Below, one piece after another: positions 3,193 through 64,000 of a stretch of DNA of 64,000 nt. Within the stretch, counting starts at the first letter, position 1. Each line of letters begins with the position of its first letter. The position numbers and the translations under genes were made by a program. The notes beneath the pieces were generated by a model. That model did not search any database. It was given only the letters and a program-made list of their open reading frames with translations, and had not been told where the DNA came from. The stretch spans positions 62,001 through 126,000 of the IMG/VR virus record IMGVR_UViG_3300042922_000542. One strand, written 5' to 3'.

Positions 3193-5748
3193 ATGGGGAG
3201 GCAGATAGATACAGTAGTTAAGCCAATTCGTTCTTATTATAATGAGAGCGATAGAGAAAATTCTGATTATGACCAAGTACTGCCAATAACATCATTTGAT
3301 GCAGTGCTAGAAACAGGTGATCCAGAGTCTATGAATTTAACAACATTAAAACAAAATATAGAACATAGACTAAGTTCTCTTGATACAGGTAAACAGAATA
3401 TTATTCAAGCTGGGAATAGTGGTAATATCGCAATATTCACTGGACAAGAAGGGGTATTAAGTGAATTGCTTAAAATAGATAATATTACGACAGAGCCTTT
3501 ATCCGCTTCATCTAACAAAATTATTACGGAGAAGGCAATTGTAAATTACTATCAAGACGTAATACAGCCCGAAATAGGAAACGCTGGGGGTTTGGGCGAA
3601 AAGGTCGAGAGTTTAGAAATAGATCGTACTATAATGCAAGGTGAGCTTGATAACATAGATACTCAGTTATCAACAGTCACTAGCGATTTATTATTGAAAG
3701 CAAGTATATCTGAACTAGATGATGTACGTGTATTAGCTCAAGGTAAAGCTGATGTAACTGAGATCAATGCTATTAAAGCTGATGTAAATCAAACAAAGAT
3801 TGACATACAGGACAGAATTATTAAAAATATACCAATTTTACCAGGTACATATACTAAAGTTATAGTTGATGAGAAGGGACTTATAACATCAGGGAGTAAT
3901 ATTACATTAAATGAATTACCGGATTTTCCTATCTCTAAAATAACGGATTTGGATAATGCTATTAGCGCTAAAGCTAATGTTGAAGATTTAAATTCGTTAC
4001 AAACTGCAGTTAATGGTAAACTTTCAGGTAATAATGCTATAGCCCCAGGTACTGCTACTAAAGTTACATATGATGCTAAAGGTTTAATAACTAATAGCGA
4101 TATATTGACTGAAATAGACTTACCTGCAATTAGTATTGATAAAATTACCGGGTTGAGGGATGCATTGGATGCAGCTGGATCTGAATCATCAATTGAAGAT
4201 ATCCGAACTCAATTAAATAATAAATTAGATAAAAATTTATCTATTGTTGCGGGTACTGCAACTAAGATTACTTATGATGTCAATGGTTTAATAACATCTG
4301 GATCCAACATAACCGCTGCGGACATACCTGTTATTCCTATTTCAAAGGTGGCCGGGTTGGATGATAATTTAATTAGTATAAACAATACCTCGGCCGATCT
4401 GCAAATTCAATTAAATAATAGAGTTATTAAAAATGAGGATATTGTTGCTGCTACCGCTACTAAAGTTACATATGATGCTAAAGGTTTAATTACAGGAAGT
4501 CAATCATTAATTGAATCGGATATACCTGAAATACCTACTTCAAAAGTAACTGGATTAGATGCAGCATTGGCTAATATTGGTGATATTCCGGCAGATATTG
4601 AAACTCAATTAAATAATAAATTAGATAAGAATATCGATGTAGTCGCTGGTACATTTACTAAAATTACCTTTGATATTAAAGGTCTAATAACATCCGGATC
4701 TAATTTAATAGAAGCAGATATACCTGAATTGGGGATTGATAAAATAACAAATCTTCAGGCAACGATTAATGATAAACTATCAAAAAATATCGACATTATT
4801 GCAGGTGTCGGTACAAAAATATCTTACGATACTAAAGGCCTTGTTATAGGTGCTGAAAATCTAACTGCAAATGATATACCTGAAATACCTACTTCAAAAG
4901 TAACTGGATTAGATGAAGCTTTAGCTAATATAGATATACCTGCTGATTTAGAAGCTACATTAAATGCTAAATTGGATAAGAATATTGATATTGTTGCCGG
5001 CACATATCCTAAAATTACTTACGATACTAAGGGATTGATAACAGGCGGCCAAATATTAGTTGAAGCTGATATTCCCACATTACCTACATCAAAAATAATC
5101 GGTCTGGACGATGCATTAGCTAATATAGATATACCTGCTGACTTACAAGCTACATTAAATGCTAAACTAGATAAGAATATTGATATTGTTGCGGGTACTG
5201 CTACTAAAATCACATATGACGTTAAAGGATTAATAATATCCGGTGAAACGTTAGTAGCATCAGATATACCTGAATTGGGGATTGATAAAATAACAAATCT
5301 TCAGGCAACAATTGACGGTAAACTATCAAAAAATATTGCAATAACAGCAGGTACAGCTACTAAAATTACCTATGATGTAAATGGTTTAATAACTGCAAGT
5401 GATATATTAACCGCTGCAGATATACCTGAAATACCTACTTCAAAAATAATCGGTCTGGACGATGCATTAGCTAATATAGATATACCTGCTGATTTACAAA
5501 ATCAATTAGATAGTAAAGTTACTAAGAATGCTGACATCGTAGGTGGGACATTTGCTAAAATCACATACGATGATAAAGGATTAGTTACCAGCGGTCAAGT
5601 TCTGACTGAATCAGATATACCTGAAATAGGAATTGCTAAGGTTACTAATCTTCAAACATCTCTTGATGGTAAAGCTACAGTAGTTGCATCAACCACAGCA
5701 CCAGTAGAAACACTAGCTTCAAATATATTATATTGTGTATATGAGTAG
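3193..5748 (+). CDS. Tail fibre protein built from 10 tandem 52-68 aa repeats
   Basis: Repeat consensus N-x-x-I-x-AGT-x-TKITYD-x-KGLIT...DIPE...KI-x-GL-x-x-AL occurs 10 times, typical of phage tail-fibre shaft repeats. SD AAGGAGGA. Followed by XkdW/XkdX-like small genes. Confidence 0.85.
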   Translation: MGRQIDTVVKPIRSYYNESDRENSDYDQVLPITSFDAVLETGDPESMNLTTLKQNIEHRLSSLDTGKQNIIQAGNSGNIAIFTGQEGVLSELLKIDNITTEPLSASSNKIITEKAIVNYYQDVIQPEIGNAGGLGEKVESLEIDRTIMQGELDNIDTQLSTVTSDLLLKASISELDDVRVLAQGKADVTEINAIKADVNQTKIDIQDRIIKNIPILPGTYTKVIVDEKGLITSGSNITLNELPDFPISKITDLDNAISAKANVEDLNSLQTAVNGKLSGNNAIAPGTATKVTYDAKGLITNSDILTEIDLPAISIDKITGLRDALDAAGSESSIEDIRTQLNNKLDKNLSIVAGTATKITYDVNGLITSGSNITAADIPVIPISKVAGLDDNLISINNTSADLQIQLNNRVIKNEDIVAATATKVTYDAKGLITGSQSLIESDIPEIPTSKVTGLDAALANIGDIPADIETQLNNKLDKNIDVVAGTFTKITFDIKGLITSGSNLIEADIPELGIDKITNLQATINDKLSKNIDIIAGVGTKISYDTKGLVIGAENLTANDIPEIPTSKVTGLDEALANIDIPADLEATLNAKLDKNIDIVAGTYPKITYDTKGLITGGQILVEADIPTLPTSKIIGLDDALANIDIPADLQATLNAKLDKNIDIVAGTATKITYDVKGLIISGETLVASDIPELGIDKITNLQATIDGKLSKNIAITAGTATKITYDVNGLITASDILTAADIPEIPTSKIIGLDDALANIDIPADLQNQLDSKVTKNADIVGGTFAKITYDDKGLVTSGQVLTESDIPEIGIAKVTNLQTSLDGKATVVASTTAPVETLASNILYCVYE

Positions 5749-6378: not shown

Positions 6379-7662
6379 TTATTTTACATATTTTTTCATG
6401 AAATCTTCAAATGATAATTTTAGGAATATTACATCAGTTTGTAATTCTCCAACCTTAATGATATCAGATTTTAATTCGATATCTTTAGGAATTAATTTAC
6501 CATAGAAGTCGTATGTGAATTTTCTAAATACTTCAGCGTTAACTGGTTTTATTTCTAACATTAAATCAACACGTCCTGGACGGAAGAATGTGGGTGAAAA
6601 TCGTTCTATATGATTGGTTGTCATAATTATTATTCTATCTTCTCCACTCATTAATCCATCTAATGCATTCAGCATATGGGCAAACGCTAAATTTTCTTCA
6701 CCTGTAATTTTCTTATCGGGAGCTGTTTCATCATCCTTTTCTTTTTCTGGAACAAATTCATTTATCAGAAATGGATATTTATCAATATCCGATATTAAGA
6801 ATAATGGGTTATTAACTGGATGTGCTGTAATTGCATCAGGTATAAATCTACCATTTTTCCCACCAGTTACATAGTATATGTTTCTGTACCATTCTGATGC
6901 AATAGCCCTTGCTATAGTATCTTTACCAGTAGATGGCATCCCATATAATAATATTTTTAAATTATGCGTAATTCCATGCTGTTTATAATATTCTTTATTA
7001 GCGAAAAACTGATTGACTGCGGTAACGATTGTTGTCTTAGTTTCCGTATCTAAATATACAGTATTCAATCGACGTTTTTGTATTGGTGCCAGCTTATCCC
7101 AATATGTGTAACCATCTGATTCATGAGCATCTTTGTATACATTAACAATCGTTGAATTAGATCGTATCTTTAATAATGAATCTCTATGACTGAGCATATC
7201 GCTTTCAAAATCAGTAACAAATGAATTACTCATTGAAAATGTTCCAACCGTATATTCGCGATTAATTAAACGCGACATACCACCATTTAGATTTGTAAAA
7301 TTATTAGTTTTTATAGTTAAGACGATCTCATAATTACGATAGTTCAAGATATGTGAACCATCGCCAAGTTGAAAATATTCACCAGCTTCAGAATCTCTAC
7401 GGGATGCTTTTAAATTGAGAGATGATTTCTTTTTGATGTCATTGTACTTATACAATATTCCGTATAGTGCTTGTTCCATCCATTCATCATAAAAACCATT
7501 TACTGTAAAAGAGATCATTCTGAAAAATCTATCTTGAATTTTTTTAACAACAAAATTTCCAACGGTAGTTGAAACCGCTAGTACATTTGATTCAACTAAT
7601 TCAACTGTTGGTTTGATAAATAACTTTTGCGCTTCTTCCTTTATAAGTCTTTGTAATGTCAT
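6379..7662 (-). CDS. BCS1-like AAA+ ATPase
   Basis: KRRLNTVYL...FFANKEYYKQHGI...ILLYGMPSTGK (Walker A), FLISDID (Walker B), LNALDGLMSGEDRIIIMTTNH and FRPGRVD (SRH/Arg finger). This matches the BCS1 clade motif order. Confidence 0.8.
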   Translation of the reverse strand: MTLQRLIKEEAQKLFIKPTVELVESNVLAVSTTVGNFVVKKIQDRFFRMISFTVNGFYDEWMEQALYGILYKYNDIKKKSSLNLKASRRDSEAGEYFQLGDGSHILNYRNYEIVLTIKTNNFTNLNGGMSRLINREYTVGTFSMSNSFVTDFESDMLSHRDSLLKIRSNSTIVNVYKDAHESDGYTYWDKLAPIQKRRLNTVYLDTETKTTIVTAVNQFFANKEYYKQHGITHNLKILLYGMPSTGKDTIARAIASEWYRNIYYVTGGKNGRFIPDAITAHPVNNPLFLISDIDKYPFLINEFVPEKEKDDETAPDKKITGEENLAFAHMLNALDGLMSGEDRIIIMTTNHIERFSPTFFRPGRVDLMLEIKPVNAEVFRKFTYDFYGKLIPKDIELKSDIIKVGELQTDVIFLKLSFEDFMKKYVK

Positions 7663-61437: not shown

Positions 61438-62052
61438 TTATAATAATTTATTTAAACCCCATTGGTGAAAATTATAATTATTAAATGTTCCAGCGAAAAC
61501 GAAAGGTGTACCATCGTTAAAATAACGCAATGTTGCACGTGACACATCAAGATCCGGATATTCTCTTATGAATATTTCAGCCTCGACATCATTTAATCTT
61601 AATGGCTTGTATTTAGCACGTGGAATACGCCTTCTTAATTGACGTGCATTCATTGTTTCATACCCATTAATCTTAAATCGTTTAGCTACAATACGTAAAT
61701 GATCTAGCGTCATATCGTTTAAATGTAGTCTACATAACTGAGCATACAATATTTCTTCAGTAGTTGATGCAATTTCAGACTTAATATTAGAATTATTATT
61801 CATTGTAGTTCCTTCTATGATATCAACTATTGATTCGAGTGTGCGTACAGTATTTTTTATATCTTTAATTAATCGTCGCTCATTATTATGTTCAACTATT
61901 TTATTTAATTCCTTCGTGGTATTATTTAACTCATCACATATATCACGAATTTGCATGATGTTACATTGATAACTATCAGGTTCAAATTGACGTATTTTAT
62001 CCTCATTAGAACCGAATTGACCATATTTGCTGCTCAACACAATTTTTTCCAT
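61438..62052 (-). CDS. Coiled-coil protein with a Rho-N-like helix-extended-helix module
   Basis: MTLDHLRIVAKRFKINGYETMNARQLRRRI matches the Rho termination factor N-terminal domain pattern; SD GGAGGA. Confidence 0.6.
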   Translation of the reverse strand: MEKIVLSSKYGQFGSNEDKIRQFEPDSYQCNIMQIRDICDELNNTTKELNKIVEHNNERRLIKDIKNTVRTLESIVDIIEGTTMNNNSNIKSEIASTTEEILYAQLCRLHLNDMTLDHLRIVAKRFKINGYETMNARQLRRRIPRAKYKPLRLNDVEAEIFIREYPDLDVSRATLRYFNDGTPFVFAGTFNNYNFHQWGLNKLL

Positions 62053-62102: not shown

Positions 62103-62220
62103 CTATATTCGATTTAGGCATGTATTTAAATCAATATAAATATAATAAAATTAATTTGTAATTTTATATTAAAAAAATAATAAATAGGAGTGGGGATCAC
62201 CCCACCCCTATTTATTATAT

Positions 62221-62379
62221 TTACATATCACTTAATAATGCAATTGAGATATTCTCAAGTGCAGATACATCTATTTTGATCTCATTGTTTACTCTGTTGA
62301 TGATCATATTTTTAGGATTAAATCCTTCAAACATAAATTCTAATTCGTCTAACTCTCCAGCTAGTGAATTCAGTTCATC
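62221..62379 (-). CDS. RNA polymerase beta-prime-like subunit, 3' exon (52 aa)
   Basis: Begins GAT GAA CTG AAT (DELN...). Joined to exon 1 it restores NADFDG-DELN, the catalytic DxDGD motif. Confidence 0.85.
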   Translation of the reverse strand, partial: DELNSLAGELDELEFMFEGFNPKNMIINRVNNEIKIDVSALENISIALLSDM

Positions 62380-63225
62380 CGTTCTATTCACATAAGTTCG
62401 CAACACCTATGCAGTTCTCTTATGAACTTCCCTAACTTTCATTAGGATACTAGACTATATCTTTACTCTACTGAATTAGAGTACATCTCGTTTCCCATTA
62501 CTCTACTATCTTGAAAATAGCAGCCTGTCATTGGCTTACAGGGGTACTCCCATTACTGGGATAGTCGTTGAGGCTGATTCATAATATTAATTGAATTTAT
62601 AATAACTCTGGTAAATTATTATATCTTCGTAATTATTCTGGTAAATTACTATCTGCTTCCCCTAGCGATGTCCCATTCTAAATTGTTTACGTTGTTATTG
62701 GTCTTGTTCCCGTCTATATGACGAACACAAATCCATCCTTCTGGATTAGGGATAAATGTTCTGGCTACTAATTGATGAACTCTGATCTTATGTATAACTC
62801 CTTTGTGTTCAAGTATTACATACAAGGAACCATTTCGGTTGCTACATTGGTCTAATGACTTTCCTGTTATCTTGTCCTTTACATCACCATTTGTACTGAC
62901 TCTATATTGGGATCTCTTACCCTGTAGGTATATATCCCTCCATGATGTTTTATTTTTACCCATTAAGCAATTTATCATTTCTATACCCTCATTTATATTT
63001 TTTACCAGATAATATTTAATATTAATATTATGAAGCTTGCCTGCGGATTTGCAATATATCCTTAACATTTTTACTATACCTTAGGAATTACCCCTTGCCA
63101 TTATAACATCACTGTTATTATTTAGTAGTTAAGGCTTTATGCATCCAATTATCAATTTATAATAATCAGATAGAGTTCAAGTAACTCTGGTCCCCGCATA
63201 TATGAGATGATCGGCGACTCATTCC
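62380..63225 (-). mobile_element. Group I intron (subgroup IA, 846 nt) with homing endonuclease ORF
   Basis: 5' exon ends in U and the intron ends in G. P3 63204-09/62484-89; P4 UGCGG/CCGCA 63194-98/63042-46; P7 GACUAU/AUAGUC 62561-66/62453-58; P8; P9 with GAAA loop; an extra segment between P7 and P3 (IA feature). Confidence 0.9.
62649..62978 (-). CDS. Intron-encoded HNH endonuclease (NUMOD4 + HNH, I-HmuI-like), short
   Basis: YRVSTNGDV...RVHQLVARTFIPNP...VRHIDGNKTNNNVNNLEW. ATG 62978 after GAGGG is more likely than the track start 63068, which lies in the intron core. Confidence 0.8.
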   Translation of the reverse strand: MINCLMGKNKTSWRDIYLQGKRSQYRVSTNGDVKDKITGKSLDQCSNRNGSLYVILEHKGVIHKIRVHQLVARTFIPNPEGWICVRHIDGNKTNNNVNNLEWDIARGSR

Positions 63226-64000
63226 ACCGTCAAAATCGGCATTCAGTCCAGGAAGTATACCAGATGGAATTGATAATGTCATATCATCGCTATCAATTTT
63301 GACATTACGAATTTTCATCTTTAATATACTACCAAACGTTATTGTCGGATTTCTATTAATTATTTTCCAAGGCTTATATTTTTTAAGTACTAATTGTATT
63401 ATCGAATATATGTATTCATCATATTGAAATTTAGATTTTAAATAATTATGGGCCTTTGTAATAGTCCATCCCCTATCATTCATTATCTCCCTGATGATTT
63501 TTCCTGAATATAAAACAATAAATGTTTTATATGACACATCAATTTCATCCAATTTGAGTGTCGGGTCTAGTACGATTACATTTCTGCCCGTATAGTTAAA
63601 CTGTCCACCTAATACGTTTGCTCTAGCCCATCCATGTTTACCATCGATGAGTGAGAAATTTAAATTCCATAATTCATTGACTCTTTGCTGAGCAGAGTAT
63701 AAGTATAATGGAACTTCTATAGGTGAAGCTGTTTTAAGATTTAATGTAATTGCTGTTAATGGATGCACGTGCTTGTCAATAGGACTGAAATAATATGATT
63801 CTGTAGTAATTCCCTGTGGACGTAATACTGTGCTATACACAGGTATTTTAGATGTCCATAGAGAATCTTTCTCCGCAATTAATGAATCAATTAAATCAGC
63901 CTTCATTTTTCTCTTCTGTCGATAATATAACATAATTTCTTCAAAGTTTTGATAGAACTCATTCAATCCAATATTATGATATTTTAACATTGATTTTTTA
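63226..64000 (-). CDS. Phage multisubunit RNA polymerase beta-prime-like subunit, 5' exon (partial, open at the right edge)
   Basis: GGQFNYTGRNVIV, IINRNPTI, GLNADFDG. The frame is open upstream of 63990 to the window end. Confidence 0.9.

What the first reader, a model, noticed from the sequence alone, without database searches (positions are those of the whole stretch)
62221..64000. Group I intron splits the RNA polymerase catalytic motif NADFDG|D
Exon 1 ends ...GCC GAT TTT GAC GGT (63226) and exon 2 begins GAT GAA CTG AAT (62379). Removing 62380..63225 restores NADFDGDELN; unspliced mRNA gives NADFDGG, which lacks the third Mg-binding Asp. All core pairings are visible, including P1 (UGACGGU with GCCG-A-UCA). 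Enzyme activity therefore depends on self-splicing, a possible control point. The spliced subunit ends 52 aa after the motif, consistent with the split beta-prime of phiKZ/AR9-like RNAPs, where RNAP introns are known.
Basis: partly seen in the sequence, partly recalled or inferred. Interest (0 to 1): 0.7.

Follow-up and report, generated by a model that had tools for sequence, protein, structure and literature searches.

The report
Group I intron in phage RNAP active site
A self-splicing-type (group I) intron carrying a truncated homing-endonuclease gene interrupts the catalytic NADFDGD motif of a jumbo phage's own RNA polymerase; the call is correct, but the same arrangement is already annotated in phages AR9 and phiKZ, so it is a new example of a known thing.

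Summary
On the minus strand, exon 1 ends GAC GGT at 63226, an 846-nt insert (63225..62380) follows, and exon 2 starts GAT GAA at 62379. Removing the insert gives NADFDGDELN and a 460-aa protein. This protein aligns without a gap across the junction with an uninterrupted homologue (L005, about 74% identical).

The insert has a complete group I core: P1 with U·G, P3, P4, P6/P6a, P7, P7.1/7.2, P8, P9-9.2 and a terminal G. Rfam RF00028 scores 42.7 bits (E 3e-9), below the gathering score of 50. The cause is a 109-aa HNH/NUMOD4 ORF in the P6a loop. ORF-less relatives, including one at the identical site, pass the threshold.

The gene is the N-terminal half of the non-virion RNAP beta' subunit (phiKZ gp55 / AR9 gp270 type) of a 246-kb soil-metagenome jumbo phage.

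AR9 g270 is annotated with an intron plus HNH gene at exactly this site (DYDG|D). phiKZ gp55 has one 15 nt upstream (N|ADFDGD).

The HNH ORF here is truncated, so the intron is probably immobile. A "control point" role has no support. The location fits homing into conserved sequence. Splicing itself could not be tested because no RNA data were listed.

Across relatives, seven insertion positions fall within 27 nt of this motif, some leaving 12-15-nt micro-exons.

The parts
63226..64000 (-). Exon 1 of the non-virion RNAP beta' N-terminal subunit gene. This is the window part; the gene starts at window-equivalent 64449, and exon 1 is 408 aa. It ends ...NADFDG.
   Evidence: Pfam RNA_pol_Rpb1_2 scores 28.1 bits against a cut-off of 25.3. 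phrog_2987 gives 1e-52 and covers profile positions 44-421 of 478. tblastn hits AR9 g270, phiR1-37 g274 and phiKZ-like gp55 homologues.
62380..63225 (-). Group I intron, 846 nt. Its last base is G (omega-G) at 62380.
   Evidence: RF00028 scores 42.7 bits with E=3e-9. It is 76-88% identical over the core to the ORF-less intron L012:3083-3446. nhmmer finds both halves.
63208..63232 (-). P1. The exon strand UGACGGU (63232..63226) pairs with the internal guide GCCG-A-UCA (63215..63208), with a U63226·G63215 wobble at the 5' splice site. A weak 3-bp P10 is possible between 63218..63216 and exon 2 GAU.
   Evidence: read directly from the sequence.
63204..63209 (-). P3 5' strand CAUCUC. It pairs with GAGAUG at 62489..62484. 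There is no P2.
   Evidence: One search gives 6 of 6 pairs. The family shows different but complementary P3 strands in several members (a noisy test).
63042..63198 (-). P4 (63198..63193 with 63047..63042) enclosing a large branched P5 extension. The extension helices are 63188-63172, 63169-63145 and 63134-63060, the last with two inner hairpins.
   Evidence: The MFE fold recovers P4 and the P5 helices. There are compensatory differences versus AR9 (P4) and L012 (inner hairpin).
62572..63041 (-). P6 (63041..63039 with 62574..62572) and the 14-bp P6a stem (63034..63021 with 62591..62578). The loop of P6a holds the endonuclease ORF.
   Evidence: One search gives 14 of 14 pairs. AR9 has the same placement of the ORF in a P6a-type stem.
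62649..62978 (-). Intron ORF of 109 aa, with a NUMOD4 + HNH_3 (I-HmuI-like) homing endonuclease fold. A GAGGG Shine-Dalgarno sequence lies 7 nt upstream of the ATG. The ORF is truncated 7 residues after the NLEW motif. The mechanical ORF from an upstream ATG is 63068..62649.
   Evidence: Pfam HNH_3 scores 26.2 and NUMOD4 25.1 bits. PDB 1U3E matches residues 2-91 only. It is 35% identical to AR9 g271. The alignment shows the missing T..EN..H segment and C-terminal domain. phrog_959 is covered at 4-96 of 138.
62453..62571 (-). J6/7-P7 (GACUA 62566..62562 with UAGUC 62457..62453), P7.1 (62561..62548), P7.2 (62542..62503), the P3 3' strand (62489..62484) and P8 (62483..62464).
   Evidence: The P7 flanks UCAACGACUA and AAGAUAUAGUC match the RF00028 consensus and are invariant in 31 family members.
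62380..62446 (-). P9 (62446..62431), P9.1 (62427..62414), P9.2 (62413..62389) and the 3' tail AAUAGAACG.
   Evidence: RNAalifold on 31 family members shows compensatory changes in P9 and P9.2.
62221..62379 (-). Exon 2, 52 codons (DELNSLAG...LLSDM) plus a TAA stop.
   Evidence: It is colinear with the C-terminal 51-54 residues of the intronless homologues L005, phiR1-37 g274 and LPJP1 rpoC_2.
62177..62218 (-). Intrinsic terminator after the gene: a 19-bp stem followed by a T-run.

Best explanation
This is a group I (IA-like: no P2, with P7.1/P7.2) intron inserted between the Gly and last Asp codons of the NADFDGD Mg-binding motif. The interrupted gene encodes the N-terminal half of the non-virion RNA polymerase beta' subunit of a 246-kb jumbo phage. 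The pre-mRNA is expected to fold so that the exon end UGACGGU pairs with the guide GCCGAUCA (U·G at the cut). Guanosine would attack at 63226|63225, and the freed exon would attack after the terminal G at 62380. That joins GACGGU to GAUGAA and restores NADFDGDELN and a 460-aa subunit. The intron is there because it is, or was, a mobile selfish element. It carries an I-HmuI-type HNH/NUMOD4 homing-endonuclease gene in the P6a loop. Such elements home into the most conserved, least deletable DNA of essential genes. Here the endonuclease gene has lost the end of its catalytic motif and its whole C-terminal DNA-binding part, so this copy is probably no longer mobile and persists only because it splices. 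What is shown: the sequence anatomy, the homology, and junction colinearity with intronless alleles. What is inferred: actual splicing, loss of endonuclease activity, and the evolutionary reason for the site.
For: The spliced product aligns without a gap to the intronless L005 (about 74% identity) and to phiR1-37 g274 and LPJP1 rpoC_2. Exon 1 alone stops at position 421 of 478 in phrog_2987, whereas intronless L005 reaches 453. RF00028 gives E=3e-9 and is the only hit in the genome. All core helices are perfectly paired. The family alignment shows covariation in P9 and P9.2. The closest RNA relative is an ORF-less intron. An ORF-less intron at the identical site in another jumbo-phage contig scores 65.6 bits, above the gathering score. 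AR9 g270 is annotated as a join with the HNH gene g271 at the same nucleotide position. phiKZ gp55/gp56 sits 15 nt upstream and scores 75.6 bits. The HNH truncation is shown. Literature: jumbo-phage RNAP genes are often intron-disrupted, and AR9 nvRNAP beta'-N is disrupted while the MarsHill gene is intact (10.1101/2020.12.14.422802). Introns favour conserved active-site codons (PMC12908238).
Against: There is no RNA evidence: no RNA run was listed, and the phage is known only from a soil metagenome. The Rfam score of 42.7 bits is below the gathering threshold of 50. P1 and P3 compete for two nucleotides (63209-63208), and P10 is only 3 bp. The P5 pairing itself is short and uncertain. Fold z-scores of the halves are modest (-1.45 and -2.30). 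Loss of endonuclease activity is inferred from the alignment only; the role of the missing Asn as a metal ligand in I-HmuI is recalled from memory, not tested.
Confidence: 0.88

Rival explanations
1. Regulatory checkpoint. Splicing efficiency is used by the phage to time or dose production of active non-virion RNAP, for example by coupling it to translation or the GTP level. The position in the catalytic motif would guarantee that unspliced message gives a dead subunit.
For: Unspliced message does lack the third Asp and stops 19 codons into the intron, after the ribosome would have run through the guide, P3 and P4 strands. Translation-splicing coupling is known for the T4 td intron (general knowledge).
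Against: Close relatives have zero (L005), one, or up to five or more introns in this gene, at different sites. The window genome has only this one intron of the family. MarsHill, PhiPA3, 201phi2-1, phiR1-37 and LPJP1 have uninterrupted genes. A conserved regulator would not be this patchy. No regulatory element was found.
Confidence: 0.08
2. Competition or immunity element. The intron protects the site from endonucleases of co-infecting relatives because the target is disrupted, and/or its HNH protein nicks the intronless allele of competitors, as PhiPA3 gp210 does to phiKZ gp178.
For: PhiPA3 gp210 gives an experimental precedent in a jumbo-phage RNAP gene (PMC11620839). Seven insertion positions within 27 nt among relatives suggest strong endonuclease pressure on this stretch. 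The intronless relative L005 keeps an almost identical target with GGT at the junction.
Against: The HNH ORF here lacks the end of the catalytic motif and the DNA-binding C-terminus, so the weapon role is unlikely for this copy. The protective role follows passively from any insertion and is not tested.
Confidence: 0.15
3. Not a functional intron. The gene is broken, either as a decayed ribozyme (a pseudogene) or as two separate polypeptides with a free-standing HNH gene between them.
For: The Rfam score is below the gathering threshold. There is no RNA evidence.
Against: Every core helix is intact and the conserved P7 flanks are identical to the family consensus. The junction is exact and in frame. 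The genome is a complete phage with terminal repeats, and this is its homologue of an essential subunit. Splitting NADFDG|D between two chains has no precedent.
Confidence: 0.04

Closest known systems
Bacillus phage AR9 / PBS1 g270 intron with HNH gene g271 (non-virion RNAP beta' N-terminal subunit; GenBank KU878088, CDS annotated as a join)
   Same: It is in the orthologous gene. The insertion position is identical: after GGT of ...D-[FY]-D-G and before the last Asp codon. It is a group I intron with no P2, with the ORF in a P6a-type stem, and with a NUMOD4+HNH_3 endonuclease. The P7 flanks and the P9/P9.2 layout are the same.
   Different: The host proteins are only about 29% identical. The AR9 intron is 897 nt with a short P5, whereas this one is 846 nt with a roughly 145-nt branched P5 extension. 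AR9 g271 is full length (184 aa), whereas this ORF is 109 aa and truncated. The endonucleases are 35% identical. By blastn the RNA here is no closer to the g270 intron than to other phage introns.
Pseudomonas phage phiKZ gp55 intron with gp56 HNH endonuclease
   Same: It is in the orthologous nvRNAP beta'-N gene. A group I intron (RF00028, 75.6 bits) with an HNH gene lies inside the same catalytic motif. It is cited as known in PMC11512511.
   Different: It is inserted 15 nt upstream (N|ADFDGD). gp56 is 334 aa and lies at the 5' side of the intron. Its relatives PhiPA3 and 201phi2-1 lack the intron.
PhiPA3 gp210 intron endonuclease in the virion RNAP gene (Birkholz et al. 2024, PMC11620839)
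   Same: It is an HNH nicking endonuclease inside a group I intron of a jumbo-phage multisubunit RNAP gene.
   Different: It lies in a different RNAP (virion), a different subunit and a different site. Its activity and competitive benefit are shown experimentally, and nothing of that kind is shown here. The ORF here is truncated.
I-HmuI / SPO1 DNA polymerase intron and the T4 td, nrdB and sunY introns (classical phage group I introns)
   Same: They have the same kind of ribozyme with a homing-endonuclease ORF in a peripheral loop, inserted at conserved codons of an essential enzyme. The ORF matches I-HmuI (PDB 1U3E) with E=6.8e-8.
   Different: They lie in different host genes. I-HmuI is 174 aa with a C-terminal DNA-binding region that is absent here.

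Membership tests
Group I intron (Rfam RF00028) | Score at or above the curated gathering threshold (50 bits) | tested here: inconclusive
   The score is 42.7 bits with E=3e-9. It is the only hit in the 246-kb genome. The model is forced onto the 3' part because a 430-nt ORF-bearing loop splits the core. ORF-less relatives pass the threshold: the same-site intron in G006 scores 65.6, L014 60.3, L012 55.2 and phiKZ 75.6 bits.
Group I intron (Rfam RF00028) | P1 formed by the 5' exon end and an internal guide, with U·G at the splice site | tested here: met
   UGACGGU pairs with GCCG-A-UCA, with U63226·G63215.
Group I intron (Rfam RF00028) | Terminal G (omega-G) before the 3' exon | tested here: met
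   G lies at 62380, in the family-typical tail GUGAAUAGAACG.
Group I intron (Rfam RF00028) | Conserved core P3-P4-P6 / P7-P3'-P8 with the P7 guanosine site flanks | tested here: met
   All helices are fully paired. UCAACGACUA and AAGAUAUAGUC match the RF00028 consensus and are invariant in 31 relatives. P9 and P9.2 covary.
Group I intron (Rfam RF00028) | Removal restores an uninterrupted, homologous reading frame | tested here: met
   Residues 408|409 are contiguous against intronless L005. The product also aligns with phiR1-37 and LPJP1.
Group I intron (Rfam RF00028) | GTP-dependent self-splicing | not testable with these tools
   No RNA run was listed. The DNA contig shows only the intron-plus form.
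I-HmuI-like HNH homing endonuclease (Pfam HNH_3 + NUMOD4) | Both domains above the Pfam cut-offs | tested here: met
   HNH_3 scores 26.2 against 24.8, and NUMOD4 scores 25.1 against 23.4. phrog_959 gives 1.6e-27.
I-HmuI-like HNH homing endonuclease (Pfam HNH_3 + NUMOD4) | Complete beta-beta-alpha-metal motif, including the distal (T)..EN..H segment | tested here: not met
   The ORF stops 7 residues after NLEW. AR9 g271, phiKZ gp56 and the L011 intron ORF all continue with T..EN..H. The HNH_3 profile is covered only at 2-38 of 46.
I-HmuI-like HNH homing endonuclease (Pfam HNH_3 + NUMOD4) | C-terminal DNA-binding region | tested here: not met
   The ORF aligns to 1U3E residues 2-91 of 174 only. 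Relatives have 70-230 more residues. Only 57 nt remain before the P6a 3' strand.
Jumbo-phage non-virion RNAP beta' N-terminal subunit (phiKZ gp55 / AR9 gp270) | Homology to the family, and the catalytic NADFDGD motif | tested here: met
   phrog_2987 gives 1e-52. tblastn matches AR9 g270 (annotated as a non-virion RNAP subunit), phiR1-37 g274 and Noxifer nvRNAP beta'. The motif is complete only after splicing.
Jumbo-phage non-virion RNAP beta' N-terminal subunit (phiKZ gp55 / AR9 gp270) | The protein ends about 50-70 aa after the motif (split beta') | tested here: met
   There are 52 aa after DFDG, against 51-54 in L005, LPJP1 and phiR1-37.
Jumbo-phage non-virion RNAP beta' N-terminal subunit (phiKZ gp55 / AR9 gp270) | Non-virion rather than virion enzyme | tested here: inconclusive
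   The assignment rests only on the annotation of the best hits. No proteome is available.

The most novel reading that the evidence does not exclude
The 27 nt coding PG-L-N-A-D-F-D-G|D of this gene is a contested landing strip for related group I introns. Across relatives plus phiKZ I count seven different insertion positions: PG|L, PGL|N, N|A, NA|D, NAD-T|TY, NADF|D and DFDG|D. Tandem introns are separated by micro-exons of only 12-15 nt. The window's intron is closest in RNA sequence to an intron sitting 21 nt upstream, which has a different guide sequence. That would mean one RNA lineage has re-targeted between neighbouring sites. It would also mean that occupancy of a site (here by an intron with a dead endonuclease) acts as immunity against the endonucleases of competing phages.
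Probability: 0.3. Interest if true: 0.55.

Novelty: new member of a known kind. Interest (0 to 1): 0.32.

Why it matters
For annotation, the two ORFs and the HNH gene should be joined into one 460-aa RNAP subunit. Automatic gene calling would otherwise report a truncated, catalytically dead beta' fragment. Biologically the element adds a metagenomic example to the known habit of jumbo-phage RNAP genes collecting group I introns at active-site codons. The relatives fetched here make this catalytic loop a good natural test bed for three questions. How do homing elements compete for one short conserved target? How small can an exon between two group I introns be? Does an intron with a decayed endonuclease still pay its way by blocking the site? 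None of this changes the understanding of RNAP or of group I introns.

Tried and rejected
1. Rfam with gathering thresholds on the whole window found nothing. Only the E-value mode found the intron.

2. No phage record shares more than short intron-core stretches of DNA with this region. The phage itself has no close sequenced relative in that collection, and its best protein hits are under 30% identical.

3. RNA evidence was sought twice and no RNA run was listed. Laying the one DNA run showed a single contig identical to the window, with no intronless variant.

4. An automated test of P3 covariation across 32 family members was noisy, because the P4 anchor motif was often mis-located. Mean best helix was 5.0 against 4.1 in mismatched controls. 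I cite only individual clear cases from it.

5. RNAalifold on the 3' domain did not recover P7, which is long-range and invariant, and it mis-drew a small hairpin.

6. An intein, a group II intron and a plain split into two genes were considered and rejected. The frame has stops 19 codons into the insert, there are no intein or group II signatures, and a full group I core is present.

7. The AR9 genome paper (Lavysh 2016) could not be read. The claim that AR9 splicing was determined experimentally therefore rests on a secondary statement in 10.1101/2020.12.14.422802 and on the GenBank join.

8. The exact 3' end of the intron in the Phe codon could not be settled in three relatives (see the noticed items).
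Full report
**What is in the sequence**

Read on the minus strand, an open frame ends ...L-N-A-D-F-D-G with GGT at 63228-63226. It then runs 19 more codons into unrelated sequence to a TGA at 63168-63166 (ORF 63166..63990). After 846 nt, just past a G at 62380, GAT GAA CTG AAT opens a 52-codon frame that ends at 62221. A 19-bp intrinsic terminator follows at 62218..62177.

The frame continues upstream beyond the window. In the whole 246,147-bp record (a complete virus genome with terminal repeats from a soil metagenome) the gene starts at genome 126449, behind an AGGAGA ribosome-binding site. Exon 1 is 408 aa and the joined product 460 aa.

**What the gene is**

- Exon 1 matches Pfam RNA_pol_Rpb1_2 above its cut-off and phrog_2987, 'RNA polymerase beta subunit', at 1e-52.
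- tblastn finds only distant (under 30% identity) relatives in sequenced phages. These include phiR1-37 g274, AR9/PBS1 g270 (annotated as non-virion RNAP beta' N-terminus), LPJP1 rpoC_2 and the phiKZ gp55 group.
- The gene is therefore the N-terminal half of the split beta' subunit of the non-virion RNAP of a new AR9/phiKZ-style jumbo phage.

**Is the junction right?**

- IMG/VR holds closer relatives. One of them, L005, is uninterrupted. Its 459-aa protein is about 74% identical to the spliced product, and the alignment passes from residue 408 to 409 across the proposed junction with no gap.
- phiR1-37 and LPJP1 are also uninterrupted. They align colinearly with exon 2 and end within two residues of it.
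- Exon 1 alone stops at position 421 of the 478-position phrog profile, whereas intronless L005 runs to 453.
- The junction NADFDG|DELN is thus fixed by homology, not only by the motif.

**Is the insert a group I intron?**

- RF00028 matches 62430-62624 at 42.7 bits, E=3e-9. It is the only match in the genome. The score is below the gathering value of 50, so the default scan was blank.
- The reason is visible: a 430-nt loop carrying an ORF splits the core.
- By direct reading, checked by script, every expected helix is fully paired:
  - P1: UGACGGU with GCCG-A-UCA, U·G at the cut.
  - P3: 63209-63204 with 62489-62484.
  - P4: 63198-63193 with 63047-63042.
  - P5: a branched extension.
  - P6 plus a 14-bp P6a, closing on the ORF.
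  - P7: 62566-62562 with 62457-62453, with the consensus flanks UCAACGACUA and AAGAUAUAGUC.
  - P7.1, P7.2, P8, P9, P9.1 and P9.2, and a terminal G.
- There is no P2.
- The 21-nt P7/P9 motif occurs in 44 other IMG/VR stretches, mostly contigs of jumbo-phage size. An alignment of 31 of them shows compensatory changes in P9 and P9.2.
- The nearest RNA relative is an ORF-less 364-nt intron, L012:3083-3446, which is 76-88% identical over the core. It has compensatory differences in P8 and in a P5 hairpin.
- A sequence profile of four ORF-less relatives finds only this locus in the genome, as two ordered halves either side of the ORF (E=2.5e-15 and 0.0019).
- Minimum-energy folds of the halves recover most helices. 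Their z-scores are only -1.45 and -2.30, so thermodynamics alone would not have made the case.

**The intron ORF**

- Behind a GAGGG Shine-Dalgarno sequence, an ATG at 62978 opens 109 codons with NUMOD4 and HNH_3 domains.
- These match I-HmuI (PDB 1U3E) over its residues 2-91 and are 35% identical to AR9 g271.
- When aligned with AR9 g271, phiKZ gp56 and the HNH ORF of a related intron, the ORF stops seven residues after the NLEW motif. The others continue with T..EN..H and then 70-230 further residues. phrog_959 is covered only to position 96 of 138.
- Only 57 nt remain before the P6a 3' strand, so the missing part has been deleted rather than frameshifted.
- I infer that the endonuclease is inactive and the intron immobile. 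This rests on the alignment and on my recollection that the missing Asn is a metal ligand in I-HmuI. It was not tested.

**Comparison with what is known**

- AR9 g270 is annotated as a two-piece join around the HNH gene g271.
- Reading the AR9 sequence, exon 1 ends ...GAC TAT GAC GGT and exon 2 begins GAC GTA TTG AAT. This is the identical nucleotide position, with the ORF again inside a P6a-type stem.
- phiKZ gp55, the Pseudomonas orthologue, is annotated as a short ORF followed by the gp56 HNH endonuclease. By comparison with intronless PhiPA3 gp054, its exon 1 ends ...CCT AAT and exon 2 begins GCT GAT TTT GAC GGC, i.e. N|ADFDGD. The intervening RNA scores 75.6 bits on RF00028.
- An ORF-less intron at the same DFDG|D site in another 282-kb contig (G006) scores 65.6 bits.
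- The literature states that:
  - jumbo-phage RNAP genes are often intron-disrupted, and AR9's nvRNAP beta'-N is disrupted while MarsHill's is intact;
  - phiKZ gp55 and gp180 carry introns;
  - introns favour conserved active-site codons;
  - one such intron endonuclease, PhiPA3 gp210, nicks the RNAP gene of a co-infecting phage and gives a competitive advantage.
- The finding is therefore a new member of a known kind.

**Why this site, and is it a control point?**

- In the close relatives the same gene carries from zero to at least five introns. They sit after residues 161/162, 222, 288 (the conserved ...SG|RS... motif) and 368 (NRNP|T), and around the catalytic loop.
- The window genome has just this one.
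- Such patchiness, always at the most conserved motifs, is the signature of homing elements. Their targets are conserved DNA, and imprecise loss is lethal.
- A conserved regulatory device would not be missing from sister phages.
- The three alleles that carry an intron at this site all end exon 1 in GGT, supplying the U for the U·G pair. Intronless alleles use GGT, GGA, GGC or GGG.
- I give the 'control point' idea about 8%.

**Seen on the way**

- Counting phiKZ, seven insertion positions fall within 27 nt of this motif: PG|L, PGL|N, N|A, NA|D, NAD-T|TY, NADF|D and DFDG|D.
- Several contigs carry two introns in tandem, separated by micro-exons of 12 nt (GACTTTGATGGT in G006), 13 nt (CTTAATGCTGACT in L012 and others) or 15 nt (G009).
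- The window's intron is most similar to the one at PG|L, not to the AR9 intron at its own site. Its guide sequence differs from that relative at the aligned position.
- This suggests re-targeting between neighbouring sites, but it is not demonstrated.

**Limits**

- Splicing was not observed. No RNA run was listed, and the only DNA run is probably the source of the assembly.
- P1 and P3 overlap by two nucleotides, P10 is weak, and P5 proper is short.
- The subgroup label (IA-like) comes from inspection only.

Noticed in passing
L012:3083-4825; L013:3546-6249; L011:2574-3890; L014 (reverse strand) 6834-7152; L059 (reverse strand) 2090-2856; L061:4341-5104; L066:1381-2740: The 27 nt coding PG-L-NADFDG|D is a hot spot. 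There are seven different group I insertion positions among relatives and phiKZ. Tandem introns are separated by micro-exons of 12, 13 or 15 nt, for example L012:3447-3459 CTTAATGCTGACT, and GACTTTGATGGT at 2477-2488 on the reverse strand of L059.
   Followed up: partly
L011:3880-3895, L013:6240-6255, L060 (reverse strand) ~4455-4470, versus L012:4816-4830: To restore the Phe codon, the intron that splits it (NAD-T|TY) must end in A in three contigs (...TTTAACA|TC, ...CCCCTA|TT, ...AAAAAA|TT). In L012 it ends in the usual G (...CCCATG|TT). I found no alternative junction that keeps the frame. This is unexplained.
   Followed up: partly
L012:3822-4736 (minus strand of the locus) and L011:2933-3793 (minus strand): The Phe-codon intron carries a roughly 290-300-aa GIY-YIG-like ORF (GYIY...YIGS) on the strand opposite to the host gene. 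It lies between the P7 3' strand and the 3' splice site. An antisense endonuclease gene inside a phage group I intron is unusual.
   Followed up: no
whole genome G000 (246,147 bp): This is the only group I intron detectable in the window's genome, by RF00028, by the family motifs and by a family profile. Related contigs carry two to five or more introns in this one gene, and one contig (IMGVR_UViG_3300025010_000028) gave five separate stretches carrying this family's motif.
   Followed up: partly
window 62648-62599 (minus strand): Just after the HNH stop codon lie two hairpins (62648-62630 and 62622-62599). They share the repeated loop-side string AAUUUACCAGA. Their function is unknown; they may be remnants left by the deletion that truncated the ORF.
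   Followed up: no
window 62099-62092 (minus strand), upstream of the next gene (62052..61438): The string TATATTAT matches the AR9-type early promoter consensus quoted in 10.1101/2020.12.14.422802. A one-mismatch copy (AATATTAT) lies in the P6a loop upstream of the HNH ORF (about 63013-63006). This hints that the phage uses AR9-like early promoters and that the intron ORF might have its own.
   Followed up: no
L011:977-2221, L012:1029-2347 and 2588-2982, L013, L014: The other introns of the same gene in relatives sit after residue 288 (in the conserved ...NFSG|RSVIV... motif) and after residue 368 (LNRNP|TITFGS). These are again the most conserved beta' motifs.
   Followed up: partly
window 64000 and beyond (genome 126001-126449): The gene runs off the window. 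About 150 N-terminal codons, including a Cys-rich zinc-finger-like stretch (CKCG...CPEC), lie outside it.
   Followed up: yes
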